Assembly: GCF_963676685.1 (NCBI RefSeq)
Contig: NC_092354.1
Coordinates: 81,530,001 to 81,594,000 of the forward strand
Direction of reading: 5' to 3'
Source of the DNA: Mytilus edulis
Lineage: Eukaryota
DNA length: 64,000 bases
Shown here in pieces: positions 12,891-39,674 of this stretch. A model generated the notes under the pieces. It was not told where the DNA came from. It made no database searches and was given only the letters and a program-made list of their open reading frames with translations. The stretch's first letter is position 1; the number at the start of each line of letters is the position of its first letter. The position numbers were made by a program, and so were the translations under genes.

Positions 12891-15248
12891 AGTGGAAATA
12901 TGGTTGAATTTGATAGGTATTGGAATATATATTCCATGCCCGTTAACATTGTTACCAACATTGTTTTTTTAATCTATATACAGGCAGATCACGGAGAAAT
13001 TTGTATAACATGCAACATTATATGCGTAATTTATTCACAAATACATAAATGTATATGTATTTGATCGTGTTTGTATCACGTAAGTATAAATTGTACATTA
13101 TTTTTCGATGTTTATATTAAGAAACAAAGATATTCATATATATTTTTTTTTTAAATCCGTGTAAAGCGTTCATGGTTACAAATTAACTTAGTGTTAAGCA
13201 GACATGTCAAAAGTTAACTTGTTTCGATCGGAAATGTCAAATCAAAGTTAAGTTATGTTAACTTATGTCAAAACTGGTCTCAAAGTTAACCTCAAGTATG
13301 TTAACTGATGGCAGGACTGGTTCGAAGTTAACTTTAATCACTTGCGGACCTGTTTCCAAAATAAACTTTTTGGCAGGCATAGGATCAAGTCCACTTTTCA
13401 ACATGATTTTGGTCCTAGGGCTAGTCATGACAGTCCTTAATCCTGTCACAGATTATTTCTGACCAGTCTTAATGACTGGTTATCAAGTTAAATTGCTGTA
13501 CATGTTAAATCTTTGTTCTGTATTGTCTTAAATTTATTTTACTTATAAAATAAGATCTAAGGTAATGTTGTTTACAAATAAATGTCTTTTATCAAATTAT
13601 AGTGTAATAAGTCAGTGAAAAGGACGTCCCTATCAGAGATCGCTCTAATATAACCTTAATATAATGTTTAAGAAAAAAAATGTCGTTTGCTGACTGACTG
13701 GCTTTCAAAATTTTCAGAATTGTATTACAACTACAACAACAGGGTACAGAAAAGTACAAAGCTTTCAAAACCATATCAGATGTCTTGAAACGCCTATTTT
13801 GCACAACCAATTGATGCACAGGAAACTATAAACAAAATTAGAATTTAAAAACAACGAAATAACATTTTATTAAAAGTCACGAATAACATTTTTTTTATAT
13901 AAATGGTATTCATCTTGTCTTATTAACTTTAAGTATATTGCACATTATATAACATACATATCTAGATGTTAAATTATTTAGACGCCCCCCATGCGGTTTT
14001 GAATACATGATATTTATCTTGTCTTTTACTATACCACACATTATATGATATATGTATCTTAATGATTTGTTAATTAGACGCCCAACCCCGTTCCAAAATA
14101 AGATATCGACAACAAAAAAAATGCAAAAAAACAAAATTACTATCAATAAGCTGAAATTGCACTAATTAAGATATTTATTGACTACTATGATTAATGAATC
14201 GTATCATTAGTGATACATCACTATATCATGACGTCAATTAAAGCTATAAGGTCAACCTCATCCTGATAATGGTTGCATTATAAAAAAGTTTTGTAACTAA
14301 GAATTGGATAAAAAAGACTCACTACAAGGACTTTAAATAAAAAAACAAAAATGCAAAATTGAACTGTGGTGTTGGGATCAATTTTTCTCAATAATTTGTA
14401 CAAGATATAGAAAAATATAGAAAAATTATAGAACTCCTTACCTTTGTATGTTTCAAATCCACTTAAAACATATCAGAAGTCGCCATTGATACCCCTCAAC
14501 TAGTTTGCTATCTGAGTCACATCATAGGGAAGCAGTTATGCGTGAATGATCTTCAAAGAGAAATACATTTAAATGGTCTTCAAGTTTTATTAGTTTTTGT
14601 TCATTATAATTGTATGGGTAATAAATACAATACTTGATTGACAAGGCTCAATAAGGATATATGAATTGTGTGTTTATATTCTTGTTTATTTTAAAGTATT
14701 GTATGTCTCTATGTATATCAATTAGTATTAATGTTTTCCTTATGAATGATTTTGATGTTTATGTTTTATTAAAAAGTAATTGTTCCATCTGATGTTATGG
14801 GTCCACGCATAGTATTGACGACTGAATAAATTAAAAAGTCAATTGTTTAAAAACCCCGGTTGTCTTCTTTAGCGTTGTAAACTGCCTTTTTACAAATGAT
14901 GTCCGGGTGGTTGAATTTCAAAGTGTGGAAATAAATACACAATAAGAACAATGAGAAAATAATGTTTATAAACAATTAAATACAAAAGTTTGATCAATCG
15001 ATACTAACTAATATAAATATCGTTTAAATACCAACACTGAAAAAAATCGTAAATATCATTTCTTATCAATTCTAAACAATGCTTAATATGCAAAACAGAA
15101 AGATTTAAATGATAAAATACTAAAATATCTTTTTTCGCGATTAAAACAGATAATTTATGAAAACTTATATATAGCAACACATTGACTAAATTACAACCAA
15201 GATCAACTACTTGGTTTTAACGCTGATGCCTAAACTAAGTGTGGATTA

Positions 15249-15625
15249 TACGGAGCCCCGCTAGGGACATGCAAAGAAAAAAAAATATATTGTGCGCACA
15301 AAATAATATATTGTGCGCACAACTTAAATATATTGTGCGCACAACTTAGATATATTGTGCGCACAACTTAAATATATTGTGCGCACAAAATAATATCGTG
15401 TGCGCACAAAATAATATCTTGTGCGCACAACTTAAATATATTGTGCGCTCAATTTAAATATATTGTGCGCACAAAATAATATCGTGTGCGCACAAAATAA
15501 TATCTTGTGCACACAACATAATATATTGTGCGCTCAATTTAAATATATTGTGCGCACAACATAATATACTGTGCGCACAATATAATGTAATGTGCGCACG
15601 ACATAATATAATGTGCGCACAAAAT
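15249..15625 (+). repeat. Left TIR built from ~16 copies of a 21-22-bp unit containing the palindrome TGTGCGCACA
   Basis: About 40 bp of unique terminus, then tandem units; mirrors 36447-36843. Confidence 0.92.
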
Positions 15626-16782
15626 AAGTAGGAACAGATAACTGCATGTTGCTCCACACGTTTGAAGAATAAAGCTCAAGCTGACATTACCATGTGTTCA
15701 AGAAGACTAATTTGAAAGAGGTTTACAAAATGGTTTATGTATGTAAGGTAAGCTTCTTTTTTTATTCAAAACAATAAAAGGTATTCTATATAGTGGTTTT
15801 CGGAAATGGGAAAGGGTGGTGGTACTTTCTTTTTTGAAATGGCTATCTTATCGGGGCCTCTTATAGCTGACTATATGCGGTATGGGCTTTGCTCACTGTT
15901 GAAGGCCGTAAGGTGACCTATAGTTGTTAATGTCTGTGTCACAAATTTTTTTTGGTTAAATTATCGGTAATTTCTGTATTTTATAAGTATCCTAAAAAAT
16001 TATGCATTTTTTATTCAGAAATAACTCATATTTATCAAATGTTCATGAATAGAGGAAAATACGTCATTTTTTGCTGCATGTTTATTGAAATTAAAAAAAA
16101 ATCTCTATTTACAGTTTTATAAAATTGGGTCACATCATTTCCCTGCAAAATGAAACAAATTGCTGTTTTGAAAAATAGGGGTCCATGAACTCGTTTTCAA
16201 ATTAAATCAATTTGAATGATAAAAATCAGTCGAAAAATGCATCTTTTCCCGATAAGTCACAGTTTGACGTCGCGAAAATAACATTTTACGTTAGCAACGT
16301 CATTACCTTAAGACCCATGCTTATATAAGCACTAACTCATCATCACTCATAATTCATAAATATACTATCTACCCTTAATATTTTATATATGAATTGACAT
16401 TCTCAATAGCATCTTTATATATGATATGAAATTCATTCCCCAAATCAATATACAGTTATCAAACGTAAATGCATTTTTATATAGGATGTCATTAAAAAGG
16501 AGGGTCATTTTTATATAAAATCTCGCAAAATTATGACCCATATTTTTGGCACATCCCCGTATACCCAATAATAGGAAGTTGACCCCCCCCCCCCCGTGAT
16601 AAAAACACCCATTTCTTAATACATTTATTAACCAACTGAACAAAAGTGTATGTGTTTTTCTGTAATTGCCCTGTTTTTTCTGTTATGGCCCTGTATTAAT
16701 TAATGCCCAGTTTGTCTGTACTAAGCAGCCCAAATAGGGTTTTTAATAAACTGGCAGTAATTTTTGGCAATAATGTACTTAT

Positions 16783-17487: not shown

Positions 17488-17514
17488 AGGCTACTCTTAG
17501 TTGGTTAATAAAAT

Positions 17515-18183: not shown

Positions 18184-18498
18184 TTTATGCCCCACCTACG
18201 ATAGTAGAGGGGCATTATGTTTTCTGGTCTGTGCGTCCGTTCGTCTGTCCGTCCGTTCGTTCGTCTGTTCGTTCGTCCGTTCGTCCGTCTGTCCCGCTTC
18301 AGGTTAAAGTTTTTGGTCGAGGTAGTTTTTGATGAAGTTGAAGTCCAATCGACTTCAAACTTGGTACACATGTTCCCTATGATATGATCTTTCTAATTTT
18401 AATGCCAAATTAGAGATTTTACCCCAAATTCACGGTCCACTGAACATAGAAAATGATAGTGCGAGTGGGGCATTCGTGTACTGAGGACACATTCTTGT
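18184..18498 (+). mobile_element. Helentron-associated non-autonomous element (HINE/DINE-1-like)
   Basis: T-rich start, subterminal IR ATGCCCCAC/GTGGGGCAT, (GTCC/GTTC)n microsatellite, 3' hairpin GTGTACTGAGGACAC. Confidence 0.75.
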
Positions 18499-19184: not shown

Positions 19185-22100
19185 ATGGTCTCCCTGATAG
19201 AATTTTTAAAAGAAAGAAACATTCCTGTAGACAAGGTAGAGGAAGATAAGGTAAGCATGAATTTGAATATATTACAATTTATAAGAAAAAGACTATGAAT
19301 ATGCATCTGAATGCCATGTTTTTAAAACCACCATCCATCAATCAAATGTCATGGTCAAAGTCGTACTAACAAAGGATAGACTGAAATTAGAAATAAAATG
19401 TTTTCAAACAGCTTTTTTTTTTAAAAGGCAACATATATTATTAAAATCTGCATACATAAAAAAAATTATACTTATGTCAAGCTGTTCTCCTCAAATCTAT
19501 GTTTAACCATATTTTTAGCTCACCTGGCCCAAAGGGCCAAGTGAGCTTTTTCCCATCACTTTGCGTCCGTCGTTGTCTGTCGTCGTCCGTCGTCTTTAAC
19601 TTTTACAAAAATCTTCTCCTCTGAAACTACTGGGCCAATTTAAATCAAACTTGGCCACAATCATCATTAGGGTATCTAGTTAAAAAATGTGTCAGGTGAC
19701 CCGGCCGACTGACAAGATGGCCACCATGGCTAGAAATAGAACATCGGGGGAAAATGCAGTTTTTAGCTTATAACTCAAAAACCAAAGCACTTTAATAGAG
19801 CAAATCTGTCAAGGGGTTAAATCGTTTGTCAAGTAAATACATATCCACTTAGTAATTTTCAGATGAATTGGACAACTGGTTGTTGGGTTGCTGCCCCCAA
19901 TTGGTAATTTTAAAGAAATTTTGCATTTTTTTGTTATTACCTTGAATACTATATAGTATAGATAGAGATAAACTGTAAACAGCAACAATGCTCAGCAAAG
20001 TAAGATCTACAAATAAGTCAACATGACCAAAATGGTCAGTTGACCCCTTAAGGAGTTACTGCCCTTTATAGTCAATTTTTAACAATTTTCATTAATTTGG
20101 TAAATTTTTACAAAATATTTTCCTCTGTAACTAATGGGACAAGTTTATTATAGATAGAGAAAATAGTAAGTAGCAAGAATGTTCAGTAAAGTAAAGATCT
20201 ACAAAAACATCACCATCACCAAAACACAATTTTGTCATGAATCCATCTGTGCCCTTTGTTGAATATGCACATAGACCAAGGTGAGCGACAAAGGCTCTTA
20301 AGAGCCTCTAGTTAATATTGTTGTTAATAGAAAGTGTAAATTGCAAGGTGAGCAATTTTAGGCTCTGTTGTATATTGACATACATCTGTTGTACAAACAA
20401 AATGATACAAGCTCTTATATCAACATTTGTCTCTTTGATATTTTCAGATTGATTGTCAAGTGATATTATTATTGTCTGATGATGAACTGACAAAGTACAT
20501 CCCTATCTATGGGGACAGGATAGCTGTGAAAGATTTTTGTAAGAACCAGGGTGGTACAGGTTCAAAGTCCAAAAAAAAGAAGACACTATTACAAAAGATA
20601 AGAAAAAGACTCCATCCATCATCAAAAAGAAACTTGTTTAAAACAAAAAAAAGATATAGATGAAAGCTCAAGTGATAGTGATGACAATCCTTCTACTTCC
20701 AAGAATATTGGAAATGATCATGCAGCAAAAAGTGAAAGGCGTATAGAACTTGGTTGGCTGATGAAAGAAGGGGATAGTATGAAACAAGTTCGCTGGCCAA
20801 CTGGAGGGGGGACGAGACATCTTATTGTTGATAAAGATACTCTAGTGAGTGCCATAAAAGAAACAGCTTTAAAACTTTACTTTCCAGAAGGAATATCACC
20901 CAGGGGTAAGATTGGAAATTTTGTGGTTGACATCATGGACTTTAAACGCCAGTCAGCTAATTTAGATTTGTCTGTAGAGAATATTTATGACCGAAGCAAA
21001 ATGAGGCTGTTAAGGTTTTATTTACTAACTGTACCTAAAGAAAGGGATAACACTGAACAAGAAAAGAATTCAACAACAAGGACCAAAGAAAATGAAGACC
21101 AAAAAAGTAGTTTCACAGCTGTTGAGGTTAGAAAACCATGAAAATAACAGTTCTCATAGTTCTTATAATGAGCATACCAGTTTGAACATGTGCAGTGATG
21201 ATGAAATTCAGTTTGGACCTGTATTGGCTGATATTGATGATATTTATGACTCAACAATTCCTTTGAATGATATCCACACTCAATCTGACAGTCAGCCAGA
21301 GAATAGTTATATAGCCAATGATCCTGGAATAATCACTAATAGTCTTGGAATAATCGCCGATGGTCCTGGATTAATAAATAATGAACAATTATTTCTTGAT
21401 CCATTCCATTCTGTGAAAATTAGGGTTCATAGAGGAAATTTAATGATAGAAATGATGAAAATATTTTCAGATCCAACAATAATGTATGCTACATTTTCTG
21501 ATGTCAGTATGATATTGCCAACTGGAAAAGCGGAAGAAGGGGTAGGGGAAGGAATTTTTAGAGATTGCCTTACTGAATTTTGGAATGAGTTTATGGACAA
21601 TTGTTGCATTGGAAATTCACAGAAAGTCCCTACAATAAGACACGATTTTCAAGAGGAGCAGTGGCTGTCCATTGGCAGAATTATATTTAAAGGATGGCAG
21701 ATAGCCAATTACTTGCCCATTGGACTTTCCATAATTGTTATGGAAAATGCAATGTATGGAAAGTTTAAGTCAGATTTAATGGAAAATTTTCTTTGTTTTA
21801 TCACTGAGGAAGACAAAACATTATTTTCCACTGCTTTAAAAGATTACGAGTCAGTTGATAATGATGAACTTATAGAAGCTTTAGAGAACCATAGCTGCAG
21901 GTCTGCAGTCACAAAAGAAAGCATTACACGTATTTTGCTAGAAATCGCACACAAGGAAATGGTTCAGGAGTGCAACTTTATAACTGATGCTTGGGCCAAG
22001 ATATTATCTCAACTCGGACAGTCTCTTTCTTATGAGAATTTGACAGAAATATACAGTAAAATGGAACCCAGCAATCGCAAAGTTACCAAAATGCTGCATT

Positions 22101-22405
22101 TTTCAGATAATTTGTCTAATTTGGAACGTGAAGTTATGAACCACCTTCAGCGGTATGTTAGAGAACTTGATAAAGTATTGTTGAAAAAATTTCTTAGATT
22201 TTGCACTGGATCTGATTTAATTTTGGATGGAAAGGATACAATCACTGTTGAATTTGTAGTTCTTGATGGTTTTGGGTGTCGACCAATAGCCCATACATGT
22301 GGTCGTGTTCTCAGAATACCAAGAAATTATGAAAATTTTACTATTTTCCGTAGCGAATTCAACAACATTTTAAATACTTCTGTATGGGTAATGGACATTG
22401 TATAA
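19185..22405 (+). CDS. HECT-domain E3 ubiquitin ligase (G2E3-like HECT) with a SAM-like N-terminus; two apparent frameshifts
   Basis: Exon 19185-19250 (MVSLIEFLKERNIPVDKVEEDK, then GTAAGC) splices in phase 0 to 20448 (TTTTCAG then IDCQVILLLSDDELTKYIPIYGDRIAV). Frames join via +1 shifts near 20645 (A8 run) and ~21090-21140. The C-terminus has HECT motifs GEGIFRDCLTEFW, FLRFCTGS and RPIAHTC (Cys codon 22298-22300). A possible non-coding first exon ends at 15747 (AAG/GTAAG). Confidence 0.82.
19512..20313 (+). mobile_element. HINE in the intron of the HECT gene
   Basis: TTTTTAGCTCACCT start, AGGTGAGC subterminal IR, terminal hairpin AGGCTCTTAAGAGCCT, (CGT)n tract. Confidence 0.78.
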
Positions 22406-23444: not shown

Positions 23445-24210
23445 GAAATAAACATATTCAATGTGTACTATTTATATGGTGACACTTTTGATTTTCTCTG
23501 GCCATTTTCTGAATGTGAATACCCTGGTTGCAGAACCCTTGATTGCACTTGTATTTATACTTCTGTTACAGAAGCTTGTGTCTCCGGTAAATGTTGCCTT
23601 TTGCTTGACGCTGTTTGGGATCTAAGGTTACAAGTTCACTGAAAATAGGCAACAGGAGCTTAACTTACCTTATCCTAAACATGAAAGGACTTCGGTTACA
23701 ATAGTCAGGCCTTACTCAAATACAACAGAAATATTATAAAGCGGGAACATGGGTCGTAAGGGTAAACAAAAGTAAAAATTGAGAAAGGAAATGGTGAATG
23801 TGTCAAAGCGACAACAACCCGACCATAGAGCAGACAACAGCCGAAGCCCACCAATGAGTCTTCAATGTAGCGAGAATTCACGCACCTGTAGGTGTCATTC
23901 AGATGGCCCCTAAAAAATATGTATACTAGTACAGTGATAATGGACGTCATACTAAACTCCGAATTATACACAAGAAACTAAAATTAAAAATCATACAAGA
24001 CTAACAAAGGCCAGAGGCTCCTGACTTGGGACAGGCGCAAAATTGCGGCGGGGTTAAACATGTTTATTAGATCTCAACCCTCCCCTATACATCTAGCCAA
24101 TGTAGAAAAGTACATGGTTTGGTCAAACGGTGAAGACGAACCCTATGACGTTAAGCACGATATTGCGTCTCAAATGGTAACGTCAATTTCTTACGTTTTA
24201 CGGCGATTAA

Positions 24211-24796
24211 GGTGGTATGGGTGTCTTCGCCATCTTGGATTGTAAAAAACAGAGAATCTAAGGTCCGTATTTTCTATTAAGTTAGCAAAATTTGATGCGG
24301 GAATGCAGATATTTAATGTGAATTTTCATTTATAAGAACCAATTTATAAGAACATAACTTATAAATATTAATATTGTTACAAGTGTTGATTATTTTTTGT
24401 TGTTTTTAAATATTTTCAAATTGGCATTTTAAGGGGAGATAACTCCAAACAGTGCATTTTCTGAAGGACTATACATGGAATTTTCCTATTTTGTCTTTTA
24501 GCCGGAAAAAACGTACGGTGACCCTATCTTTTCTTTTGATATTCTCAAAGCATTGTCTGAAAGCTATCTTTTTCTAAAGTATATAACAATTCTATCATTT
24601 TGTTTAGTTTCTATTCACAAAATTGTGTTTTTTCCTAATCCATACAAAATCTGTCATTTTGTCACAACCTGTAGCTTGAGAAAATGCACGGTGACCTATC
24701 ATTTTTATAATATTTTTGAACATGTATCAATAGATACTTCATTTTGGCAAAGTTTGAACAAATTCTATCATTTTTATTTTAGACTCCCATACCACC
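24211..24796. mobile_element. Kolobok-type MITE
   Basis: TIRs GGTGGTATGGGTGTCT / AGACTCCCATACCACC, with TTAA on both sides. Confidence 0.8.
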
Positions 24797-26794
24797 TTAA
24801 TAATTATTTGGGATAAGTTTTTTTTATTTTGCTTGTAATTTTTGTTTTGCATATCAATATGGATACTTCTTAATGATTAGTTGTACTGAATATGCATGAA
24901 ATATTTCCCACTGAAAGTAACGTAAGCAACAAACAACAAAATATATCGTATTTGGGTAATGCATAAATCTATATGAAATGAGAAGATATATATACGGTAT
25001 GATGAGTGCCAATGAGACAACTCTCTACCAGAGACCAATTGACATAAAACTTAATAAAATGCAATGTTTCCCCATTTAGATCCGAAAAGGATATATATTT
25101 TGCTTTACTATAAAAAGTTTGTCGGGAATTACAAGTTTAACGGGTCTTGCTTATAAAATTCAATTTACTAATAACGGTACAATTAGATTAAAAAATTAAA
25201 CGATTGTCAGAAATAAAAGGTTATTTATAATTCATCTCATATACATGATTTACAAGCTTTGTATGATGTGGAGAGGTGTATATAGCCAATGGCCCGCTTT
25301 AGGCCCAATTTCATTTTTACTTTCAAGTTCTATACATATAAATCTTATTGCAGAGAAATTTTAAAAAAATCGAATTTTTACGCTTCCCAAATTTGAAAAT
25401 TTGAAAAAGAGGATTTTTTTATCCTCTCATGATACTAACTTTTTCACAACTTAAGAACCTCATCTAAACTAACAACCCCAGTCATCGAATTTTTTTTTAA
25501 TACTTTGTGGTCCTATTGATAGTATCTGACCATCAAGAAAATTCTGTCTCAGGAAATATACAGACGGCGATCCACCATAAATAGCGTACCCCAAATAGAC
25601 AATTAACGTTGAAAACGTATGAAAATCGTCCAGTGGACAAACTTGCAAGACATTTCATTTCTTTGAAAACGAAGTCGTTTTGACTACGCAAATTATTAAA
25701 AACTATGTAGCTGTTTTGCAAAGTTAAAGCACAATTACGAAAAAGCACTATGTAGCATGCAACTAATCTAATTTTTCAATGAATAGCGTCGCAAATGCCA
25801 ATTTATGTGTAAAAAGCGGCAAAATCCGACATTGGACATCTTGCAAGACATTTGCCAGAAGCCGTTGCATTTTTATATGAAGGGTGAGTGCTGCAAAACT
25901 TCGATTCTGATATGGTCTGTGTATGCACATTTGTTAGCATAATTTTCACAAACGAAATATCATATAATCTTATATTTTAAAACCTATAAATTTTGATAAC
26001 TTAACATTTTCCAAAATCTGACCATAATGACCACTATTTGTTTTTACCAAAAAAAAGCGTTGATCGTTACAGGAACGCATATTCAGTAATATTGTAATAC
26101 TTTATATATAAAGCATATCATTCATTTGAATTTTCGTGGATATAACACTATTTTGAAGAACACTAACACCCCTGCTAAAGTTATTATGCGTATAGTCTGT
26201 TACGTCTGACACGCACATTTTTGACGTTTTGTCAATATGTTGTCCTTATTTTAGAACATAGTAAAGTATGATAAAACAATTTGCACTTTTTTCCGAAATA
26301 GTATTTACCTGTCTAGTCTATGGATATAAGTTTTATATATCTTAACTGTTATGATTTTATAGAAAAGCTGTTTATTAGTGTGGACTTGTTGGATACACAG
26401 TATTGACGCAATAACGTGCGTTACGTCTATTTTATCATAATGACACTCCAGACAAATACAAGCAATAGTATGATAAAATAAAAGTAAAATTTAAGTTCTT
26501 TTACACGCATTTGCTAACAACAAGCGACGAACTTGACTACGTAGAAAATATTGTTCACTGAGTAGTCTGGACATACACCTATGTACGAATTAAAGTGACT
26601 ACTTGGAAACTATTTATGTTAATTTCTCTCTTTTTATAAGAAAAGGGATGACTATATTTGGTGTATGCATATCTAGCAAGATCCTTGTGTTAGACTGTTA
26701 TGTTTTCGTGATAATAGGCCCTCTATATTTGGTTGTATGGAATGATTTTACCCAAGGTTTCCAACTGGCAGGCATCTGACCTTGTTCTCATTAT

Positions 26795-29280: not shown

Positions 29281-30318
29281 TAACGAAACCAGACATAAAG
29301 TAAAATGCATAAACACAAATATAATTTTAAAATTGTACATGTAACCAGAGAAAAAATAATCATAATATCGAAGTCTACATAAGTTTGATAGTGATATCAC
29401 TGTAATAATGCTAAGTCCGTTTCAAATCGTTCCAGTAAACACCGATACAAAGTGGCAGCTTCAAAAGCATCTGTTGGTAAACTATGTCCTAATTCTTCCA
29501 TGTATAAGTTTGCGAGATCGTAAATGTCTTCATCGCATGGTAGACTACAATACGTAGATTGCTCTAAACAAATTTCAACTTCATCGATGTCAGGGCTAGT
29601 AACATAATCACTTGTTCCGTACACTTCAGGAACCGAGTAGAGTACATACGGTCGTCCATACACACCATGTTGTTTATTATTTTTTCTGATTTTATGGGCG
29701 TTCCAAATACTTACAACCTCTAAAAGTTCTTTCTGGAATTGAAAATAAATAATTAGTTTCAGGTTTCAGTCGATGAATTTTCGTGTATAAAACACTTTAT
29801 ATGCAAAGACATGAGATGGTACGAATATTTTCGAAGGTGACATTATGTATGATATTTAAGCATATATTTTAAGGCTGATGTTGACATTGTAAAATTTGGA
29901 TAACATTTTTATTGCACAAAATATGTTCGTATTATAGTCTTTAGTTCACAATTATTATCTAAGTGAAAAGTATTTTATGATAGCTTTATAAAGCAGTTAA
30001 GTTGTTGTCTGCTTAACGTAAATAAACAGAAGTATATACATTTCTTTACAGTGTTTTTTTTTCAAATAAAAACAATTAATTTCCTCACTATAAATGAATT
30101 TCATGTCGGGAGTACTAATCTGCCTTGTAATGACATTTGATTTGTTTTTCAGAGAGGTTTTATTCTTATGTATAATAACAGTTAAACAAACAAATATTGA
30201 AGTTTAAAACAAATGGCTAGCCTTAAAAAGGTATAAATGAACAGATAAACGGACTTAAGTTGAAGCATTAAAATTGGACATGAGGGCGGATAGAAGTTTA
30301 ACATTGTTTAAAGGGCGT

Positions 30319-30491
30319 TATCTTAAAGTGGTATAATCAGACTTTTTAGGCACAAATAAGAAATACTAGCTGGTTTTACTTGTATTGATTCTAAACTCCA
30401 TTTGCACATAAATCTCAACGTCATAAGTAGCATGACGTTACTATACATACATAGCGGTACCGCGAACGTCTAATGAACACAGTCCTGAACA
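30319..30491 (-). repeat. 3' LTR (TG...TA)
   Basis: Direct repeat of 35213-35385. Confidence 0.95.
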
Positions 30492-30606
30492 TCCTGGGGG
30501 GCCGCGAATGATAATTTAAGCAATAAATAAAGAAAAAACTTTAAAATGAAATAACTATTGTCTCTCAAATGAAATAAAACTTTAACTTTTAACACTTAAA
30601 CAGTCT

Positions 30607-33092
30607 CTATGCTTTACGGAACGGTTGAATCCAACTTTTGATTTTCTCCTTGGCATCAGTTTTTGCTTTTCTGGTTGAAGTAATAGTGTTGTCACTTGAA
30701 TCACACGGACTATCTGTTGATAAGAGTTCAAGTGGATATAGCTTACTTATTGGTCTAGACGTCGTGCCATTTTTAGTGCGTAAAATAGCAGACCTACAAA
30801 GTCCATCTCTCCCATAAACTAACTTAACGATAATCGCTATATTCCACACTGTCCTTGGGGTATCATCATGAATCTGTACAATGTCGCCCACTTTAATGAT
30901 TTGAGTGTTAATTCCGGTGTTTCTATGTTGTTCCCTAAGTGAAGTGAGGTATTCTCGTCGCCATCTGTTCCAAAAGTCGTGAATAATGCGTTTTTGAACA
31001 CTAGATTGTCTATTTGCTGTGTAATGTGTTAAGTTTTGTACGTTCTCCTCACTGCTGAAATTAATTGTTCCTGAATACGGTAAAGTTTTAACCCGTCTTC
31101 CATAGAGAAGATGAGACGGTGTAAGCGGTTCATCATCGGTAAGGTCCGTTGATACGTGGGTTAACGGACGATCATTTAATATAGCCTCTATCTCGATCAC
31201 AATTGTCTCTAGCACTCTAAAAGTAACTAGTGCTCGTCCTAACACTTTCTTTATGCAATTTTTGGTCAAGCCGATCAATCGTTCCCACCAACCACCATAC
31301 CATGGTGCACGCTTCGGAATAAATTTCCACTGAGTTCCATATATGTTGAGTTGTTCCTGAATAGTAGTAGATTTTGTAAGCATTTCAATTTCCTTCGCTG
31401 CTGCGGTATATGTTGTACAATTGTCAGACATCATGATTTTTGGTAACGATTTGCGGCTGGTGAATCTCCTAAACGCTAGAATGAATGTTTGTTCTGTAAG
31501 GTCTTCAACGATTTCCAAATGCACAGCTCTAGTGTTAGCGCAGGTGAATAGACAAATATATGCTTTACTAATACTGTTGCTTTTTGTTCTCACATTCAAT
31601 GCTCCTGTGAAGTCGACACCAGTTACTGTAAACGGCGGTGAATCATTAAGTCTGTCGGACGGCAGAGGTGGTGGGTCGGGTGTATGATATGGTCTTCCGG
31701 TAATTTTACGGCAAGTAACGCAATTACGGAGTATTGATTTCACACATTGTCGAATCGACGGAATCCAGTAAGACTGGCGAATAAATGTCACTGTACTTTC
31801 TAATCCAGAGTGAAAATTCTTTGCGTGTGCATCCATCACAATTAATTTACAAAGTCTGTCTTTGTTCGGTATTAGTACTGGAAATTTAGCTGATTCATCA
31901 ATAGGTGCATTGTTTATTCTCCCGCCACAACGGATAATGTTCATTTTGTCCATGTACAATCTAAGTTGCTTCACTAGCACATTTTTCTCTGATTTGTTAT
32001 TTAAACACTCAATAACATCCGGGTATTTACGCAGTTGCGAATCTCGGATCCATGCAGTCGAAGCAGTCTGAATTTCATTGACACTAAGATTTCCTGTTAG
32101 TTTGTCATTATTTCTACAGTTGTTTATGAATCGGTACATGTATGCAGTTATACGCAAAAGTTTTTGGTATGAGCTGTAGCGTTGTATATCCATAATTTTA
32201 CTTATTCCTTCATAAGATCTGATTTTCTGTTGCGGTTCACTAGTTGATTGTCCTTGCTCAATGGTAGTGCTAAGAATGTGTGATTCTTTATTCTTCCACT
32301 GTGGCCAGTTTGATTTGTCAGTGAGCCATTCGGGTCCTTTCATCCAAAGATCCAATTCTAGGAATTTGGTTGCAGTTACTCCTCTCGATAGCATATCTGC
32401 CGGATTTGAATCTGTCGGACAGTACTTCCATGTGTATTCTTGCGTAATTTCGTTAATTTCCTTCACTCGATTACTAACGAAAACGGGTAATTGTTTCTCA
32501 GTAGTAAGCCAACTTAAAGTTATCTGACTGTCACTCCATAATGTGACGCTTGTAACATCCAAGTGCGATTTCAAATGCTTGACCAGTCTTGCGCCTATCA
32601 AAGCTGCACTGAGTTCTAACTTCGGAATTGTTAACTGTTTGAGTGGTGTCACTCGATTCTTTGACATGATAAGTACGGTTTCTTTTCCACTGACTAAATA
32701 TGCGCATGCTCCATAGGCTTTCAAGCTTGCATCCGTAAACACATGTAATTCTACATTGTCTGATTTTTCTTTGAAATACGGTCTATTAATTTCCAAATGT
32801 GAACATTCATTAATATCTTTTAGAACACACTTCCATTCTGTTGTAATTTCAGATGTAAGAGGTTCATCCCAATTTAATCCTTTCTCCCACAAAGTCTGCA
32901 TAAGCATCTTACTACGCACAGTAACTGGACCAATAAGTCCGAGTGGATCATAGATTTTAGACGATTGTCTTAAAATCTCTCGTTTTGTCATACGTGTATC
33001 TTCAATATCGGTGTATTCCGGTTTGGCGAAAGTAACTGTGTCGTTACAAGTGTTCCATCTCAATCCAAGCACTTTTATGAGTTCATCTTTGT
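30607..33092 (-). CDS. BEL/Pao pol C-terminal part: Pao RNase H region, zinc-binding domain, DDE integrase and C-terminal DUF5641-type domain
   Basis: VLGLRWN, LHVFTDAS, LTIPKLEL, LWSDSQI, NPADMLSRG, VTGVDFTG, MSDNCTTY, WWERLIG. Confidence 0.92.
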
Positions 33093-35195
33093 CTAATACG
33101 CTGTGTCAATTTTCTCGGTGGCCAGTGACTCTATTTTCCAAAATTTCTCCAAGTCGTACTCATCGGTTTTTGTTGCGATCATCACGTTCATCATTGAAGC
33201 TCTCTTGTATCCATCTGTGTCAGAGTTGTGTGAATGTAGCGTTCCAGACAACAGGTATCCGATTTTTGATTGAACAGCTGTCGGTCCTTCGCCTCGGATA
33301 ATATCATTCTGAACAATTGACCAGAAGTAATCAGCTCCAATTAGAATAGAAATTTCAAAGTTTTCATCTGCTGTTACTGGGTGAGCTAATTTGATTCCTG
33401 ACAAATATGTAAGTTTTGCTGCTTGGCGTACATAGGTTCTCATCGGTACTGCGATCTCTGGAACGATCAAGACTCGAATCGGAAGTTTACCCTCTGTAGT
33501 TATGAGATATACCAATCCTGTACTCAAATGGCGAATTTTAGTACTATTTGCATTGTCTCCAAATCCGGATAGGTTAACGCTTTCAGTTCCAGTAGGTTTG
33601 AGTTTCAATTTTTCGGCTAATTCCTCTGTGATAAATGAGCGCTGTGCGCCTTCGTCAAACAATATTTTTGTATCAAGTATTTCATGTTCTGCACTTACTG
33701 GGTTAATTGCTGTCTTCAAAAGTACACGATCTGTCGATTGTGAGTGTAAAACAGTGTCTGGTTCCTCCGCGTTGTGTTGAATTGTGCCTACGGTTATATC
33801 CCCTGTTGGTTTGTTGTCTTCATTTGTTTTAACATTGTCTTTGCAAATGCTGGTGTGATGACGTTTGTGACACTTGTTGCAAGTTTTTGTAGATTTACAT
33901 GCGGACAAGCTATGGTGTCATAGACAGTTAAAGCATAAACGATCTTTTTTCACGATTGACATCCGGCCATTGTAATCAGATACTTTAGTGCAATTAACAG
34001 ACGAGTGTGGCTCCTTACAGTACGCACAGAGTGGCTTGGGTTTAGTGTTAGTTGCGTTTGTATTCTTGTTACCTCTATTTCGATTACTATAATTTGTATT
34101 TGTCAGAAAGGCGGCGGTAGCTGTAGGGTGTTCTAACTGTTCTGAAGTTTTGCCTGCATCCATAATATAAAGTTCATCGAAAATTCCACGGCGTAATTCA
34201 TTCAGTTGTAAATCTGTAGATCTATATTGTCTGGCAAGATTTCTGCGGATTTCACCGGGTAGTTTGTTCATAATAATGGGCACTAAAAACGCTCCATATG
34301 TGTCTTCACTTTGACCTAATGACTCCAATCCTCTAATGTGTATCTCAATTTCATCGTAGTAGTTTTTCATGCTAGATATCGTGTATTTAGGGGCTGGTAT
34401 ATCAACTAGTGCTTGCATATACTTCTGTCTTATTACATGCGATTGTCCATATCTTTCTTGCAGTAAAGAAATAGCTTTCTCATAATTTGCATGTGTAAGC
34501 GCAAACCCTGTGACGGTTTTCAATGCCTCATCATGGAGTAGTGACTTCAAATAATTAAATTTCTGAACGTTTCCAAGAGTAGTGTTTTCGTGAACGGATG
34601 TCTCGTATGAATCCCAAAATGACTGCCACTGCATAATATTACCATCAAAGGTAGGAAGATTCAATTTGGGCAACTTGTTGTACTCATTTAATCTAGTGTT
34701 ACTACGTGAAAACTGAGTTTCCGGTACACGGAAGTTTGAATTACATGTATTCTGTTTATTGTATATCTCGGGTTGAGCATAACTTGGTTGATCATGAGCG
34801 GGTTGAGCATGAGCGGGCTGAGCAGAGGCGGGTTGAGCAGAGGCGGAATGTGAAGGGTCGCTATAACTGACAAAATCTTTTGCATTTGTACTGAGTGTGG
34901 ATGTATTGACAAGAATGAGCTTTTGTATTTGCGTTATTTTTCCATCTAATGTGTAAGCATACTCATCTGAATCGACGATCTCGGCTTCTACTTCTCCTTC
35001 ATCAAGATTTTCTAGAATGTCCTCATTAAGTTTTTGTAGTGTCTCTTGTTTCTTCAACAGATTGTTCACAATTTTAGTTAACTCTTCAGTGTTCACGGGC
35101 TCATCTCCGTCGTCTCGGATGTCCTCAAATTTCTTCAAAAGTCGGGAAATAACGCTTCTGTGTCCTGCACGTATAGAACGTAGTTTGGAACTCAT
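33093..35195 (-). pseudogene. BEL/Pao gag (DUF1759-type, CCHC knuckles) plus aspartic protease, with an in-frame stop at 33918-33920
   Basis: LPKLNLPTFDG...WQSFWDSY; CAYCKEPHSSVNC; CFNCL*HHSLSAC continuing in the same frame; protease motif LFDEGAQRSF. Confidence 0.9.
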
Positions 35196-35211
35196 CCTGG
35201 TCACGGCACCA
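35194..35211 (-). promoter_or_regulatory. Primer binding site complementary to the tRNA-His 3' end
   Basis: TGGTGCCGTGACCAGGAT directly after the 5' LTR. Confidence 0.85.
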
Positions 35212-35212
35212 A

Positions 35213-35385
35213 TATCTTAAAGTGGTATAATCAGACTTTTTAGGCACAAATAAGAAATACTAGCTGGTTTTACTTGTATTGATTCTAAACTCCATTTGCA
35301 CATAAATCTCAACGTCATAAGTAGCATGACGTTACTATACATACATAGCGGTAACGCGAACGTCTAATGAACACAGTCCTGAACA
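35213..35385 (-). repeat. 5' LTR (TG...TA)
   Basis: Direct repeat of 30319-30491. Confidence 0.95.
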
Positions 35386-36446
35386 GGCGTTTATTTGGTC
35401 TATGCCCATGCATTGATGGGTACATAAGTCACTATTATGACTTCTTTTTATTTATCCACAATTACATTAACTGTGGACGTAAACAATTTTCCTTTGTTTT
35501 GCTTGGTCTATATAATTATATTAGCGTTAAAATAGGGAAATAGGAAGGATAATCTTGTTCGAAAATAAGTACCTGAATCAGTCTCAGGAAACAGAACCTT
35601 ATCAAGTTTTTATGAAGATGATCTCCTGAAAATAATCCATCCTCTTTTATATCTTTAAAAAATGTCATCCAAAACTGTGAGTTTTCTTTTCTATAAATTC
35701 CCCACCATGCATGATTCAATTCGTTGATTATGTTGGCTTGTGCCGTAAAGAAACGCACTGTTATTTCGAGCATACGTATCATTATCATTGCGTCGTAAAA
35801 AAGACTGCATTTCAGCGACCTTACTATTTTCGGTACCAAGATCTCCTCCCTTCCGAAGAATAGCTTTGACAAAATACCCAGAAATAACCCGAGGGTCACT
35901 ACTAGTCTGTCCTGCCTCCAGCCATATTATCAGTCTAGAAAAGCCATCTATGCATCCATTTATGCATATTCCAAAAGGTTTAAGTTTATCATAGGAATCC
36001 AAATGCCATATAAAGTTTGGCCCTTTCGAACAATATTCTCTCCTATGTAATCGACCTTTTCGTCGCATTTCAACTCCTTCAGGGTTTATAATTTGCATTA
36101 TAATTCGCACATACTCTTTTTGTATAGTTAAACCTGCTTGTCTACACTTCATAAACATCCAGCGATAACCATGAAGCCTTCCAGATCCTTTAATGTTGTC
36201 TTTGATAAAAGCAACGACATCTTCAAGTGGCGTGTAGTGTTTTCGGCGAAATAAACGTAGCTTCTTCAATATTCGTTTCAGGTGTCGATAAGAAATAATG
36301 TAGTGATGATGTTTTGCTAAAAGTGCCAGTATTTCCATATAATCGAGTCCCATTTCGAAATAAACCCTTATGTATTTCTCCATTCTTTCACTTTTAAGAG
36401 AAGATATTAGTCGCCGTACCATCAGCGCTGAATGAATTTGAATAAC

Positions 36447-36843
36447 ATTTTGTGCGCACATTATATTATGTCGTGCGCACATTATATTATATTGTGCGCA
36501 CAGTATATTATGTTGTGCGCACAATATATTTAAATTGAGCGCACAATATATTATGTTGTGTGCACAAGATATTATTTTGTGCGCACACGATATTATTTTG
36601 TGCGCACAATATATTTAAGTTGTGCGCACAATATATTATGTTGTGCGCACAATATATTTAAATTGAGCGCACAATATATTTAAGTTGTGCGCACAAGATA
36701 TTATTTTGTGCGCACACGATATTATTTTGTGCGCACAATATATTTAAGTTGTGCGCACAATATATTTAAGTTGTGCGCACAATATATTATTTTGTGCGCA
36801 CAATATATTTTTTTTCTTTGCATGTCCCTAGCGGGGCTCCGTA
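36447..36843 (-). repeat. Right TIR, ~17 copies of the same unit
   Basis: Reverse complement of the left TIR, including the variant units (GCGCTC, GTGCACAC). Confidence 0.92.
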
Positions 36844-39674
36844 GGATTAGGTTTGCGGGTTTTGTTAACCATGATTTGTATTTTCTTTATGAAACGAGTA
36901 ATGCAAATTCAATTTCAGTAAACTCCCGTATAATAATTAACAAGAAATGTATCTCTACTCAGTTGTAAGTTGAATTTTACATTTCATTTTGTCTTTGTTT
37001 TTTATTAAACATTTTTTTTTAATCACTTGAAATTCTCTTGTGACTGTATTAAAATTATCATAAATCTATTGGTTCATTGAAGTGCATATATTTTGTTATA
37101 GAACAGAATCTGAACCTCTACCCCTGTTGTCGACGATGGAATACAAAAGGAAAGGACGGTTATTATTGAAAGTAAATAGAGATTATACGCTACTCAAACC
37201 CTACAGATAACGTTCACTATACAGCCTCAGTAATACATATGTGCTTATGGTAATTAAACATGTTAAATAAGTAACGCGCAGCCATTGATGCATACTAGAG
37301 ATTCACAGGTTAAACAAAGATATGTATTCTTATGGTCATTGTTAAACGCGTGTGTAACATTATCTGTATCTGTCAGATAAAACAACAAATTGATTAGCCA
37401 ACATTGATATACCATGTACATCAAATGATATAGTTATTGTTTTATCTTAAACTAGAATACAATACACAAAAGACATGCTCAAATGATTGCCTACGTTTTA
37501 GGTAGAGTTGCAAATCCTAATGCAAACGTATAAAATATGTTTAAAAAATACGTTAAAAAAGCGTAGATCTGAACAACGAACAAGTGCTATACATAAACAC
37601 ATCCATTTCTTGGTTTAACATGATTGCAATACATTGGAAAGTTTTAATAAAACAATACCTTGTTAGTACAGATACTATGCAAGTGTACCATTGGGAACTA
37701 AAAGCTTAAACTTATCATGTACACTAATTGAAATGAAGATCTACTGAAGCTATTAATTGACATGTTATGAATATTTAACAAAGCCAATTATCCATAACCA
37801 ACTGCTGTTATTAAAATAAGTATAATTTTTTCTAAAATTTGTTTTAAACTAAATCTCGTTATCAGAAAGTTAGTGTCATATATGTCCCCCCCCCCAAAAA
37901 AAAAAAACAAAAACAAAAACAAACAAAGAAGAATTAAATGATACCGATACCAGGACACCATGACAACAAACCAGACGAAACGACTAACAACAGTCTACAA
38001 AACACGTCCCAAATAATAAGCACAACACGTTCTTTTATATTATATTGAATGCGACTTTTTCACAATTTGTATTACTTTCATTATCATTATCACTTAGCTA
38101 AAGAGTATTAAATCAAAATAGAAAAAAACAAATATTTCGGATTGCATAAGTTTGACCATTCTGATGTCAATGGTGACCTATTCTCGTTTTTGTTTTTTAA
38201 TCTTTCGATTCAAACACATTCCAGATTGATTTTGTTTTAAACAGTTAGTCTTATATCAAACACAATATTGAATTATATTCCAATTTGATAAGGTAACTGA
38301 CAAATAATTGTATGTATATGTCCTTAATGAATTTCAGTTTCATTGGTTATGTAGGATGATCTATTGTCTTATATTCTGGTATTCAGATATTTGCCTGGTA
38401 GAATGTGAATTTATACAACACATAATTGTAGGAACACCTCGATCCTGTTCCACCATCTTTGTCTCATAGATAGAATTTACATTTTTATGTACTTATTTTC
38501 CCAATGAATATGATTTTCAAGCTTGCAAAGTTTGAATCAACACTGCGCTATGCATTCAACACACGAATAGTGTAGTCAATCTTATAGTTCGAAATTTAAA
38601 CTGCAATACATTCAACTTCAATTGTGAACACTTTTAAATCTGCCTCATAACTAGATTACCCTTAGCTGTCTTTAGCAAAACTTTAAGGACTGAAAACAGT
38701 TTACCCTTCGGTTGTGCTTTCAATATGTGTCAGTATAAAATCTAAGAGGACATTTTAAATACTGATGATGTACTGTACATACATGTACGTCGGTTAAGGA
38801 AATAAAAATATGAAGTTCAAGTTATGAATATAAAGTAATTATTAGTCACTTTTCGGAGAATTCATTCTAGTTAAAAATGAAGATACAAAGCTATAAATAG
38901 GTTAAGATAAAAAAAAAATCGGTACAGCAATTTATCATGTCGATCGTTATACAGGAAATTAACAAGAAAATATGAGATGACAAAATGGTAACGATTTTTT
39001 TTTTATTTGTTTCTATTCCATGTAAATCATTATTCAAATTTCGAATATAAATAAAAAGCATAATTAAGTAAAAATGTCTGAATCGATGGATCACCCTGAA
39101 CACTGTCTAATTATGAGAAATTAAAGGTTGACAGGTAGGTGAAGCTTACATAAATGAATAGATAAATGAAAAATGTACAAATTGATACCCGATTTATATA
39201 ATTCCGAGGCCGATAGTTGGCACCAGAAGCGACGGACAAATATTCACTTTTTGATATGGGACAAGCTCTGATGTCCAACGGCCCCAGCTTGTCTAACAAA
39301 ACAGCCGTTGGCCGTCACAGTAATCTCGATATATTACAGATAGTGTGGAGAACATCATCAAAACGTAGTCAAAACAGTCAATCACTCTTCATTTGTATAA
39401 CATTTCATCCGTAAATGTTGTATTTACATATCAACTATTTGAGTTGATTACTTCTAGTGAATATGAAGATAAAATAATTAATTCAATGCACATAATCCAA
39501 AGTCAAACCAGACATGTAATGTTATAATCTTTATTTTTGTAATTTTAGATGATGAATTAAAAGGCAAATTGGTAATTGGCAATAACAGTTTTTTTGGCAC
39601 AACTTTTTGGACTTTTGGATCCTCAACGCTCTTCAACTTTTTACTTGTTATGCTTTATAGATATTTTGATATGA

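What the first reader, a model, noticed from the sequence alone, without database searches (positions are those of the whole stretch)
15243..36849. 21.6-kb DNA transposon carrying its own HECT E3 ubiquitin ligase gene
Seen: long TIRs and a perfect GGATTA TSD bracket exactly two genes of the element's own, each starting near one TIR and pointing inward. One is a spliced integrase-core DDE transposase (minus strand). The other is a spliced protein ending in a HECT domain that retains the catalytic AHTC Cys (plus strand). Established: HECT domains transfer ubiquitin via this Cys; IS3EU elements have TAY...RTA ends and 6-bp TSDs (from memory). Inference: the ligase is a constitutive second gene of the element rather than a host gene, and it might ubiquitinate a host restriction/silencing factor or regulate the transposase. 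This could explain the many dispersed 'G2E3-like' annotations in aquatic animal genomes.
Basis: partly seen in the sequence, partly recalled or inferred. Interest (0 to 1): 0.88.

Follow-up and report, generated by a model that had tools for sequence, protein, structure and literature searches.

The report
Mussel DNA transposon carrying HECT ligase
This is a dead copy of an IS3EU-type cut-and-paste transposon of the mussel Mytilus galloprovincialis, and its lineage carries a conserved HECT-type ubiquitin-ligase gene next to its transposase gene, a pairing also seen in other families and other organisms and not found in the literature searched.

Summary
Window 15249-36843 is one TIR-bounded element (TACGG...CCGTA ends, perfect 6-bp TSD GGATTA). 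It belongs to an IS3EU/GingerRoot-type family with 156 termini in this genome.

The canonical element is about 13.8 kb. This copy is 21.6 kb because it holds three nested insertions, including an RT-less BEL/Pao LTR element inside the transposase intron. Both of its own genes are frameshifted here.

Nine of ten transposase-bearing copies of the family also carry the HECT-like gene, convergent with the transposase. At least four more diverged families in the genome show the same pairing, as do 15 metagenome contigs from other organisms.

The protein (673 aa) has a helical SAM-like N-terminus, a ubiquitin-like domain and a bilobal HECT fold. Its catalytic Cys is invariant in 40 homologues.

So the ligase is an ancestral gene of the element, not a host gene. 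Deletion derivatives lacking the HECT domain have still multiplied, so it is not needed in cis. Its target is unknown. The G2E3 link is not supported.

An unverified scan note (s1-834678) reports a similar element elsewhere in this genome. No paper describing the pairing was found.

The parts
15243..15248 (.). Left target-site duplication GGATTA
   Evidence: Identical hexamer at 36844-36849. Other copies have other 6-bp TSDs.
15249..15627 (+). Left terminus (TACGGAGCCCC..., about 35 nt unique, then an A-run) followed by about 16 subterminal 21-bp repeats with the palindromic core TTGTGCGCACAA. These repeats are presumed transposase-binding sites.
   Evidence: The terminus occurs 156 times in the genome against 0 for the control.
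18188..18494 (.). About 308 bp of extra sequence not aligned in the C13 reference copy (not checked in the other copies)
   Evidence: break in collinearity between the window copy and the C13 copy.
19185..19250 (+). HECT-like gene, exon 1 (22 codons, start of the SAM-like domain), with a GT donor
   Evidence: Matches residues 1-22 of the M. galloprovincialis protein P0001.
20448..22405 (+). HECT-like gene, exon 2: rest of the SAM-like domain, ubiquitin-like domain, disordered linker and HECT domain. Catalytic Cys codon at 22298-22300. Broken here by +1 bp at about 20645 and about 21109.
   Evidence: HECT fold. Invariant Cys.
24147..26426 (.). Nested repeats absent from the other copies. Includes a 1.63-kb dispersed repeat (24797-26428) with at least 40 genomic copies.
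29400..29732 (-). Transposase exon 2 (C-terminal about 106-110 codons plus stop)
   Evidence: 100% identical to P0005 over 110 residues.
30302..35385 (-). Nested BEL/Pao LTR retrotransposon inside the transposase intron. LTRs at 30319-30491 and 35213-35385 are 99% identical. It has gag (DUF1759), protease (DUF1758), and Peptidase_A17 plus integrase zinc-binding domain (Integrase_H2C2) plus DUF5641. There is no room for a reverse-transcriptase domain.
35573..36383 (-). Transposase exon 1 (N-terminal region plus DDE integrase core, rva_4). Broken here by +4 bp at about 35706, just after the catalytic E, and -18 bp at about 35844, next to the second catalytic D.
36447..36843 (-). Right subterminal 21-bp repeats and right terminus (...GGGGCTCCGTA)
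36844..36849 (.). Right target-site duplication GGATTA

Best explanation
The interval is a defective autonomous copy of an IS3EU/GingerRoot-type cut-and-paste DNA transposon of Mytilus galloprovincialis.

Shown:
- The intact element is about 13.8 kb and has two convergent, single-intron genes.
- One gene is a transposase of about 381 aa with an integrase-like DDE core (D129, D183, E225).
- The other is a 673-aa accessory protein: a helical SAM-like N-terminus, a ubiquitin-like beta-grasp domain, a disordered linker, and a complete bilobal HECT domain. Its Cys lies 34 residues from the C-terminus.
- The accessory gene is inherited with the transposase across deeply diverged families and in other organisms.

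Inferred:
- The transposase binds the subterminal 21-bp palindrome-containing repeats, cuts at the TA...TA ends and integrates with a 6-bp staggered cut.
- The accessory protein is an active HECT E3 that forms a ubiquitin thioester on Cys639. My estimate is about 0.6.
- It modifies a partner recruited through its SAM and ubiquitin-like N-terminus. That partner is either the transposase or transpososome (about 0.3) or a host chromatin, repair or silencing factor (about 0.4), in either case favouring transposition.
- It acts in trans, because derivatives lacking the HECT domain have still multiplied.

The window copy itself is dead. Both genes are frameshifted and three younger repeats are nested in it.
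For: Element:
- TIRs and TSD.
- 156 termini against 0 for the control.
- Six full copies collinear at 95-99.7%, each with its own 6-bp TSD. 9 of 12 pairs have perfect TSDs.
- The ends and TSD length match published IS3EU features.

Genes:
- The database proteins P0001 and P0005 map as two exons each, with GT..AG introns.
- The DDE residues are invariant in 14 homologues from fish, echinoderms, beetles and molluscs.

Linkage:
- 9 of 10 transposase copies of this family carry the HECT-like gene.
- Families B to E pair both genes.
- Only these two genes are conserved between families by tblastx.
- 15 metagenome loci have HECT-like ORFs, all convergent with the transposase.
- Pairwise identities of the two proteins correlate: r 0.85, Mantel p 2e-4, and r 0.73 with p 0.003 after dropping two families.
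- HECT-positive loci are spread over the whole transposase tree.

HECT domain:
- Pfam HECT scores 27.4 bits against a cut-off of 23.9.
- AlphaFold pLDDT exceeds 90 over residues 338-668.
- The top 50 Foldseek PDB hits are all HECT domains over about 370-390 columns. Best E is 1.2e-11 (UBR5, 8p83_A); the HUWE1 conjugate 6xz1_A has E 1.3e-11 and TM 0.60.
- The HTC motif aligns to the catalytic motif of Tom1 and HUWE1.
- Cys639 is invariant in 40 homologues and in all 8 element-borne genes compared.
- Open frames of 649-733 codons persist in a 32% GC genome.

Ubiquitin-like domain: VIA Z 8-9.5 to RAWUL, UBL, SUMO and Atg12 folds.
Against: - No expression, activity or substrate data exist.
- The sequence match to HECT is marginal in Pfam and covers only profile positions 111-292 of 306.
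- The tree topologies of the two proteins share only one of five splits, so strict co-phylogeny is not shown.
- About half of the metagenome transposase loci with at least 5 kb downstream show no HECT-like ORF.
- Within family D, three copies keep only residues 1-207 and one copy has none. A further subfamily carries a HECT-like gene with shared stops and an internal gap. The HECT domain is therefore dispensable in cis.
- The complex prediction of the transposase with the N-terminal half gave only weak support: score 0.36, best control 0.00, at least 28% of contacts shared between runs, partner pLDDT 63. At 0.60 or under, the mark was reached by 5 of 78 solved complexes and by all 4 mismatches that passed.
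Confidence: 0.85

Rival explanations
1. One-off capture. A host HECT gene, or a fragment of one, was picked up by this one family (Pack-type transduplication) and is carried passively, with no role for the element.
For: DNA transposons do capture host genes. Fungal IS3EU elements acquired TET/JBP genes passively (PMC12730594). Some more distant HECT-like loci in the genome (23-30% identity, for example C14:51205005 and C11:79330390) have no transposase hit nearby.
Against: The same full-length three-domain gene, in the same convergent position, occurs in at least five families whose transposases are only 39-56% identical, and in contigs from other organisms. The divergences of the two genes correlate. 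ORFs stay open and the catalytic Cys is invariant.
Confidence: 0.03
2. The accessory protein is a conserved element gene but not a working ligase. It would be a HECT-fold scaffold or ubiquitin- or E2-binding decoy, for example sequestering an E2 or binding ubiquitinated chromatin, with the SAM and ubiquitin-like domains doing the real work.
For: Sequence similarity to canonical HECT domains is weak: 27 bits, 14-16% identity in structural alignments. Three family D copies that retain only the SAM plus ubiquitin-like part (residues 1-207, open frames of 203-223 aa) have multiplied. From my own memory, not checked here: the HECT domain of the cellular protein G2E3 was reported as not active as a classical HECT.
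Against: Cys639 and the flanking H-T-C and L-x-L-P-x-x-Y context are invariant or nearly so across 40 homologues, and the Cys sits at the canonical distance from the C-terminus. Both lobes are modelled at pLDDT above 90. Such conservation of a catalytic residue is unusual for a pseudo-enzyme.
Confidence: 0.25
3. The HECT-like gene and the transposase belong to two different nested elements, or the TIR pair brackets a composite, so the gene is a passenger of another mobile element inserted into an IS3EU element.
For: This copy demonstrably holds three nested insertions, and the region between the genes contains shared dispersed repeats.
Against: The shortest intact copy (13.8 kb) is collinear with five others, and the HECT-like gene region has no TIRs, LTRs or TSD of its own. 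In compact metagenome loci the two genes lie tail to tail, with only about 0.6-1.8 kb between the transposase match and the HECT-like ORF (L069, L083, L086).
Confidence: 0.02

Closest known systems
[quoted passage not shown] 2019, PMC6839031; Kojima 2023, PMC10045372)
   Same: TA..TA (TAYGG..CCRTA) termini, 6-bp TSDs, an integrase/IS3-like DDE transposase without an HHCC zinc finger, and occurrence in fish, cnidarians, beetles and other animals.
   Different: The papers read here describe no second gene in animal elements. None of the four papers searched for the term (PMC10045372, PMC11934779, PMC12730594, PMC6839031) mentions HECT or ubiquitin. Here a SAM, ubiquitin-like and HECT gene is a conserved partner. 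Elements are large (14-25 kb) with long subterminal repeat arrays.
Fungal IS3EU elements carrying an alpha-kinase gene and a TET/JBP dioxygenase gene (Kojima 2025, PMC12730594)
   Same: Same superfamily and the same layout: an accessory enzyme gene in the opposite orientation to the transposase. That paper interprets it as helping the element against host control.
   Different: The enzymes differ (kinase and dioxygenase against a HECT ligase), as do the hosts (rust fungi and truffles against animals). The TET/JBP genes were exchanged passively among superfamilies, whereas the HECT-like gene here appears to co-diverge with its transposase.
Cellular HECT E3 ligases (HUWE1, UBR5, NEDD4, E6AP, Tom1)
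   Same: Bilobal HECT fold, a catalytic Cys in an H-T-C context about 35 residues from the C-terminus, and a following L-x-L-P-x-x-Y motif.
   Different: Only 14-16% identity. A short protein with a unique N-terminus of SAM-like and ubiquitin-like domains. Encoded inside a transposon and multi-copy.
Transposons and viruses encoding ubiquitin-system enzymes (Ulp1/OTU protease domains in Ginger1, MULE and CACTA elements; RING E3s of herpes- and poxviruses). From my own knowledge, not checked here.
   Same: A mobile element brings its own enzyme of the ubiquitin or SUMO system, presumably to manipulate host or self proteins.
   Different: Those are proteases or RING-type ligases. A HECT-type ligase as a conserved transposon gene was not found in the literature searched.

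Membership tests
IS3EU/GingerRoot DNA transposons | Termini TA..TA, typically TAYGG..CCRTA | tested here: met
   Ends are TACGG...CCGTA. Family B also starts TACGGA. Definition taken from PMC10045372 and PMC12730594.
IS3EU/GingerRoot DNA transposons | 6-bp target-site duplication | tested here: met
   GGATTA here. Six of six full copies and 9 of 12 pairs have perfect, different 6-bp TSDs.
IS3EU/GingerRoot DNA transposons | DDE transposase of the integrase/IS3 type without an N-terminal HHCC zinc finger | tested here: met
   Pfam rva_4 integrase core, E 4.5e-27, with no zinc-finger family found. D129, D183 and E225 are invariant. Weak PDB hit to a retroviral integrase.
IS3EU/GingerRoot DNA transposons | Transposase groups phylogenetically with the Repbase IS3EU and GingerRoot reference transposases | not testable with these tools
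HECT E3 ubiquitin ligases | Bilobal HECT fold (N-lobe plus C-lobe) | tested here: met
   AlphaFold pLDDT above 90 over residues 338-668. The top 50 Foldseek PDB hits are all HECT domains, about 370-390 aligned columns, probability 1.00.
HECT E3 ubiquitin ligases | Catalytic Cys about 35 residues from the C-terminus in a conserved motif | tested here: met
   Cys639 of 673 is invariant in 40 homologues and in 8 element-borne genes. It aligns to the HTC motif of Tom1.
HECT E3 ubiquitin ligases | Score above the curated Pfam HECT threshold | tested here: met
   27.4 bits against a cut-off of 23.9. This is marginal and covers only profile positions 111-292 of 306.
HECT E3 ubiquitin ligases | E2-dependent ubiquitin thioester formation and ligase activity | not testable with these tools
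   Needs biochemistry.
   Pfam finds no zinc-finger domain. The N-terminus is a helical SAM-like domain plus a ubiquitin-like beta-grasp domain.
   All named homologues listed are 'uncharacterized protein', 'hypothetical protein' or 'HECT domain-containing protein'. The Atlas neighbours are likewise. More distant members were not inspected.
BEL/Pao LTR retrotransposons (nested insertion only) | LTRs flanking gag (DUF1759), protease (DUF1758), RT, Peptidase_A17, integrase and DUF5641 | tested here: inconclusive
   All of these are present except a reverse-transcriptase domain, for which there is no room between the protease and Peptidase_A17. It is probably an internally deleted member.

The most novel reading that the evidence does not exclude
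A deep, cross-phylum clade of animal IS3EU/GingerRoot transposons (molluscs, teleosts, amphibians, hemichordates, beetles) has carried its own active HECT ubiquitin ligase since before these families diverged. It uses the ligase in trans to license transposition, by ubiquitinating either its own transposase or a host chromatin, repair or silencing factor. This would be the first HECT E3 shown to be a transposon gene. It would also reassign thousands of orphan 'HECT domain-containing' genes in aquatic animal genomes to mobile elements.
Probability: 0.4. Interest if true: 0.85.

Novelty: new variant of a known kind. Interest (0 to 1): 0.72.

Why it matters
Transposons that bring their own host-manipulating enzymes are rare and informative. 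A conserved HECT ligase would give a direct handle on how a DNA transposon deals with the ubiquitin system of its animal host.

It also has a practical side for annotation. The HECT-like family has 2,634 representative clusters at E up to 0.001. They occur in teleosts, gar, frogs, a hemichordate, molluscs and beetles, nearly all labelled 'uncharacterized'. If most are transposon genes, counts of E3 ligases and claims of 'gene family expansion' in these genomes need correcting.

Naturally intact, 98-99% identical copies in M. galloprovincialis suggest recent activity. They offer material for a transposition assay with and without the ligase.

Tried and rejected
Tools that did not run:
The right ends and TSDs of those families were therefore not read. 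Their extent was inferred from a DNA search.
Transposase and HECT adjacency in named fish, beetle and echinoderm genomes was not tested.

Searches that led nowhere:
- The first literature search with min_terms 1 was uninformative.
- The G2E3 plus transposon search found nothing relevant.
- The Kojima 2019 review is not held.
- A simple TIR finder on the 16-17 kb pieces of families B to E found only a nested MITE-like repeat, not the true ends.

Results that fell short:
- Tree congruence: only the C-D split is shared between the HECT-like and transposase trees, so I rely on distance correlation, not topology.
- Complex prediction (transposase plus SAM and ubiquitin-like half): weak support only. 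Score 0.36, best control 0.00, at least 28% of contacts shared between runs, partner pLDDT 63. At 0.60 or under, the mark was reached by 5 of 78 solved complexes and by all 4 mismatches that passed. I do not treat this as evidence of binding.

Rejected readings: segmental duplication (each copy has its own TSD and flanks), and a HECT-less clade explaining the negative metagenome loci (they interleave with near-identical positive ones).

Exons were searched separately by reference, and the full-length proteins used were database entries P0001 and P0005.

Full report
OBSERVATION

GGATTA lies at 15243-15248. The element runs from 15249 (TACGGAGCCCC...) to 36843 (...GGGGCTCCGTA). GGATTA lies again at 36844-36849. 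The two ends form inverted repeats over about 380 bp at 94-98% complementarity. They are made of about sixteen 21-bp units with the palindromic core TTGTGCGCACAA.

This is not chance. The 28-nt terminus, with up to 3 mismatches, occurs 84 times forward and 72 times reverse in the 1.37-Gb genome, and the reversed control occurs 0 times. The window is C11:81530001-81594000 of that assembly. Protein matches of 97-99% identify the species as Mytilus galloprovincialis.

ANATOMY OF THE FAMILY

I fetched five other long TIR pairs.
- All are collinear with the window copy at 95-99.7%.
- Each has its own perfect 6-bp TSD: AAATTC, AAAAGC, CCATTG, CAAAAC, TATTTC.
- Among 12 pairs readable from the loci, nine have perfect 6-bp TSDs. 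These include a 180-bp miniature copy and a 36-kb copy.

The shortest intact copy is 13.8 kb (C13:42067340-42081119). Compared with it, the window copy has three extra blocks.
- 18188-18494.
- 24147-26426. This includes a 1.63-kb dispersed repeat with at least 40 copies.
- 30302-35385. This is a BEL/Pao LTR retrotransposon with 99%-identical LTRs. It has gag, protease, Peptidase_A17, an integrase zinc-binding domain (Integrase_H2C2) and DUF5641, but no room for a reverse-transcriptase domain.

So about 7.7 kb of the 21.6 kb is younger nested DNA.

THE TWO GENES

Two database proteins returned by the searches served as models: P0005 (381 aa) and P0001 (673 aa, LOC143065375). With them, each gene maps as two exons with canonical GT..AG introns.

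Transposase, minus strand:
- Exon 1 is about 35573-36383 and exon 2 about 29400-29732.
- The BEL/Pao element sits in its intron.
- It matches Pfam rva_4 (integrase core) at E 4.5e-27.
- D129, D183 and E225 are invariant in 14 homologues from molluscs, fish, echinoderms, a crinoid and beetles, which are 40-56% identical.

HECT-like gene, plus strand:
- Exon 1 is 19185-19250 and exon 2 is 20448-22405.

In the window copy both genes are broken relative to the intact C13 copy.
- HECT exon 2: +1 bp at about 20645 and +1 bp at about 21109.
- Transposase exon 1: +4 bp at about 35706 and -18 bp at about 35844.

A tblastx comparison of five families shows that only these two genes are conserved between families. 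Everything else shared is dispersed repeat.

Exons were searched by reference, and full-length searches used P0001 and P0005.

IS THE LIGASE GENE THE ELEMENT'S OWN?

Searching the whole genome with the two window ORFs gave ten loci with the family's transposase at 97-100% identity. Nine of them also hold the HECT-like gene at 95-100%, convergent with the transposase.
- Seven of the nine lie between TIR hits listed: C11, C13, C1, C4, C5, C2 and C14.
- The other two, on C10 and on the unplaced contig C1827, have one listed terminus each.
- The tenth locus (C2:33304130) has only a left terminus.

The many copies of about 3 kb lack both genes. They share only 220-440 bp of termini with the autonomous element and have a different common interior. 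They are a non-autonomous partner family.

The same pairing recurs in diverged families of this genome. Their transposases are 43-52% identical to the window's and their HECT-like ORFs are 27-42% identical. The ORFs are open over 649-733 codons. The two genes lie 6-11 kb apart and are always convergent.
- Family B starts TACGGAAGCC..., followed by an A-run and palindromic subterminal repeats. It spans about 25 kb and has 571 termini genome-wide.
- Family D has nine transposase copies. Five have the full 699-aa HECT-like ORF, although one of these carries an internal stop. Three have only residues 1-207. One has none.
- A further subfamily carries a HECT-like gene with shared stops and an internal gap.

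Derivatives without the HECT domain have therefore multiplied. The domain is not needed in cis.

BEYOND THIS GENOME

A scan of metagenome contigs with a transposase alignment returned 80 loci.
- By tblastn and by a profile HMM, 15 of them have HECT-like ORFs, and every one is on the strand opposite the transposase.
- L069, L083 and L086 have essentially full genes lying tail to tail with the transposase.
- Among loci with at least 5 kb downstream, 9 of 18 are positive. With at least 7 kb downstream, 7 of 13 are positive.
- On a transposase tree, positive loci are spread over the whole tree. Negative loci interleave with near-identical positive ones. This fits ancestral presence with copy-level loss or incomplete contigs, not a HECT-less clade.

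Pairwise identities of the two proteins across eight elements correlate. r is 0.85 with Mantel p 2e-4. After dropping families D and E, r is 0.73 with p 0.003. Tree topologies share only one of five splits, so co-divergence is suggested but strict co-phylogeny is not shown.

Named homologues of both proteins occur in the same species: Fundulus, Misgurnus, Oryzias, Merluccius, Haliotis, Tegillarca, Photinus, Phaedon and Mytilus edulis.

IS IT A HECT LIGASE?

- Pfam HECT is only just above threshold: 27.4 bits against 23.9, covering profile positions 111-292 of 306.
- A 40-sequence alignment gave an AlphaFold model with mean pLDDT 80 and three confident domains: residues 1-58, 111-221 and 338-668.
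- The top 50 Foldseek PDB matches are all HECT domains (UBR5, HUWE1, NEDD4, Tom1, E6AP, WWP2 and others). They cover about 370-390 columns, so both lobes. Best E is 1.2e-11 (UBR5, 8p83_A), and the TM score to the HUWE1~ubiquitin conjugate is 0.60.
- A profile search of PDB sequences aligns the R-P-x-A-H-T-C...L-x-L-P-x-x-Y segment with the catalytic segment of Tom1 and HUWE1.
- Cys639, 34 residues from the C-terminus, is invariant in the 40 homologues and in all eight element-borne genes.
- The middle domain is a ubiquitin-like beta-grasp. Nearly all of the 50 listed VIA hits are RAWUL, UBL, SUMO, Atg12 or ISG15 folds, at Z 7.4-9.5.
- The helical N-terminal domain looks SAM-like, but I did not test that by fold search.
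- No PHD or RING domain is found, and no listed homologue is named G2E3-like.

MECHANISM

Shown:
- A cut-and-paste element with IS3EU hallmarks.
- Two conserved convergent genes.
- A HECT fold with its catalytic Cys conserved.
- Trans-complementable architecture: non-autonomous and HECT-deleted derivatives exist.

Inferred:
- The transposase recognises the subterminal repeat arrays.
- The accessory protein is an active E3. My estimate is about 0.6. Against it stands about 0.25 for a non-catalytic HECT-fold scaffold.
- Its SAM and ubiquitin-like N-terminus recruits the target.

Which target is unknown. A complex prediction of the transposase with the N-terminal half passed only weakly: 0.36 against 0.00 for the controls, at least 28% of contacts shared between runs, partner pLDDT 63. 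At that level the tool reports that passes are more often wrong than right. I keep a host factor (chromatin, repair or silencing) slightly ahead of the transposase as the target.

COMPARISON AND NOVELTY

The termini (TA..TA, TAYGG..CCRTA), the 6-bp TSD and the HHCC-less integrase-like DDE transposase match the published definition of IS3EU/GingerRoot (PMC10045372, PMC12730594, PMC6839031). Grouping with the Repbase reference transposases could not be tested.

Fungal IS3EU elements are known to carry an alpha-kinase gene opposite the transposase, plus TET/JBP genes (PMC12730594). This is the closest precedent for the layout.

None of the four IS3EU/GingerRoot papers searched for the terms mentions HECT or ubiquitin. 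Full-text searches for HECT with transposase or transposon terms found nothing relevant. [quoted passage not shown] Repbase entries themselves could not be consulted, so prior annotation there cannot be excluded.

I classify this as a new variant of a known kind.

The scan holds an unverified note of a similar 27.6-kb element elsewhere in this genome (s1-834678) and a note on the protein's N-terminus (s1-830542). My genome-wide results agree with both.

VERDICT

The main interpretation is supported. The function and target of the ligase remain open.

Noticed in passing
window 30302-35385: A young BEL/Pao LTR retrotransposon with 99%-identical LTRs sits in the transposase intron. It has gag, protease, Peptidase_A17, an integrase zinc-binding domain (Integrase_H2C2) and DUF5641, but no space for a reverse-transcriptase domain. 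It looks like an internally deleted, non-autonomous copy.
   Followed up: partly
window 24797-26428: A 1.63-kb dispersed repeat with at least 40 genomic copies at 88-98% identity is nested in the element. Next to it is a unit of about 600 bp bounded by 21-nt inverted repeats (24206-24226 and 24781-24801).
   Followed up: partly
G000 C4:10097713/10111626, C7:42308686/42322274, C10:17511037/17525551, C14:19454081/19468006, C3:67061142/67074573, C5:27484439/27498497: Six loci each hold two copies of a more distant rva_4 transposase ORF (35-36% identical, open frames of up to 436 aa). The two copies face each other 13.4-14.5 kb apart. This looks like a family whose transposase gene lies inside very long terminal inverted repeats.
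   Followed up: no
G000 C5:57040483-57046685, C11:72781857-72788054, C12:77403050-77409190: Three family D copies keep an intact transposase exon but only the first 207 residues (SAM-like plus ubiquitin-like part) of the accessory protein, as an open frame of 203-223 aa. This is a HECT-deleted subfamily that has multiplied.
   Followed up: partly
L001-L030 (for example C3:78747562-78750723, C1:37499486-37502626): A non-autonomous family of about 3 kb shares only the 220-440-bp termini of the autonomous element. Its members have a common unrelated interior, 88-95% identical among copies. Miniature copies of 180-224 bp also exist (C4:39646163, C5:49459615).
   Followed up: partly
L041 1-399 = C13:33459000-33459398, and C13:33493918-33494316: The left flank of a family B element recurs 100% identical 35 kb downstream on the same strand. 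This suggests a recent duplication of about 35 kb that contains the whole element.
   Followed up: no
L041 1400-1588: A repeat of about 190 bp is present at very high copy number (dozens of hits at 90-93%) and is nested in several IS3EU-type elements.
   Followed up: no
protein P0004 (Mytilus edulis, 1123 aa): A gene model annotated as an OTU domain-containing protein shares 99% identity with 15% of the HECT-like ORF query (the C13 copy, L031). It is probably a chimeric annotation that merges a fragment of this element with a neighbouring gene.
   Followed up: no
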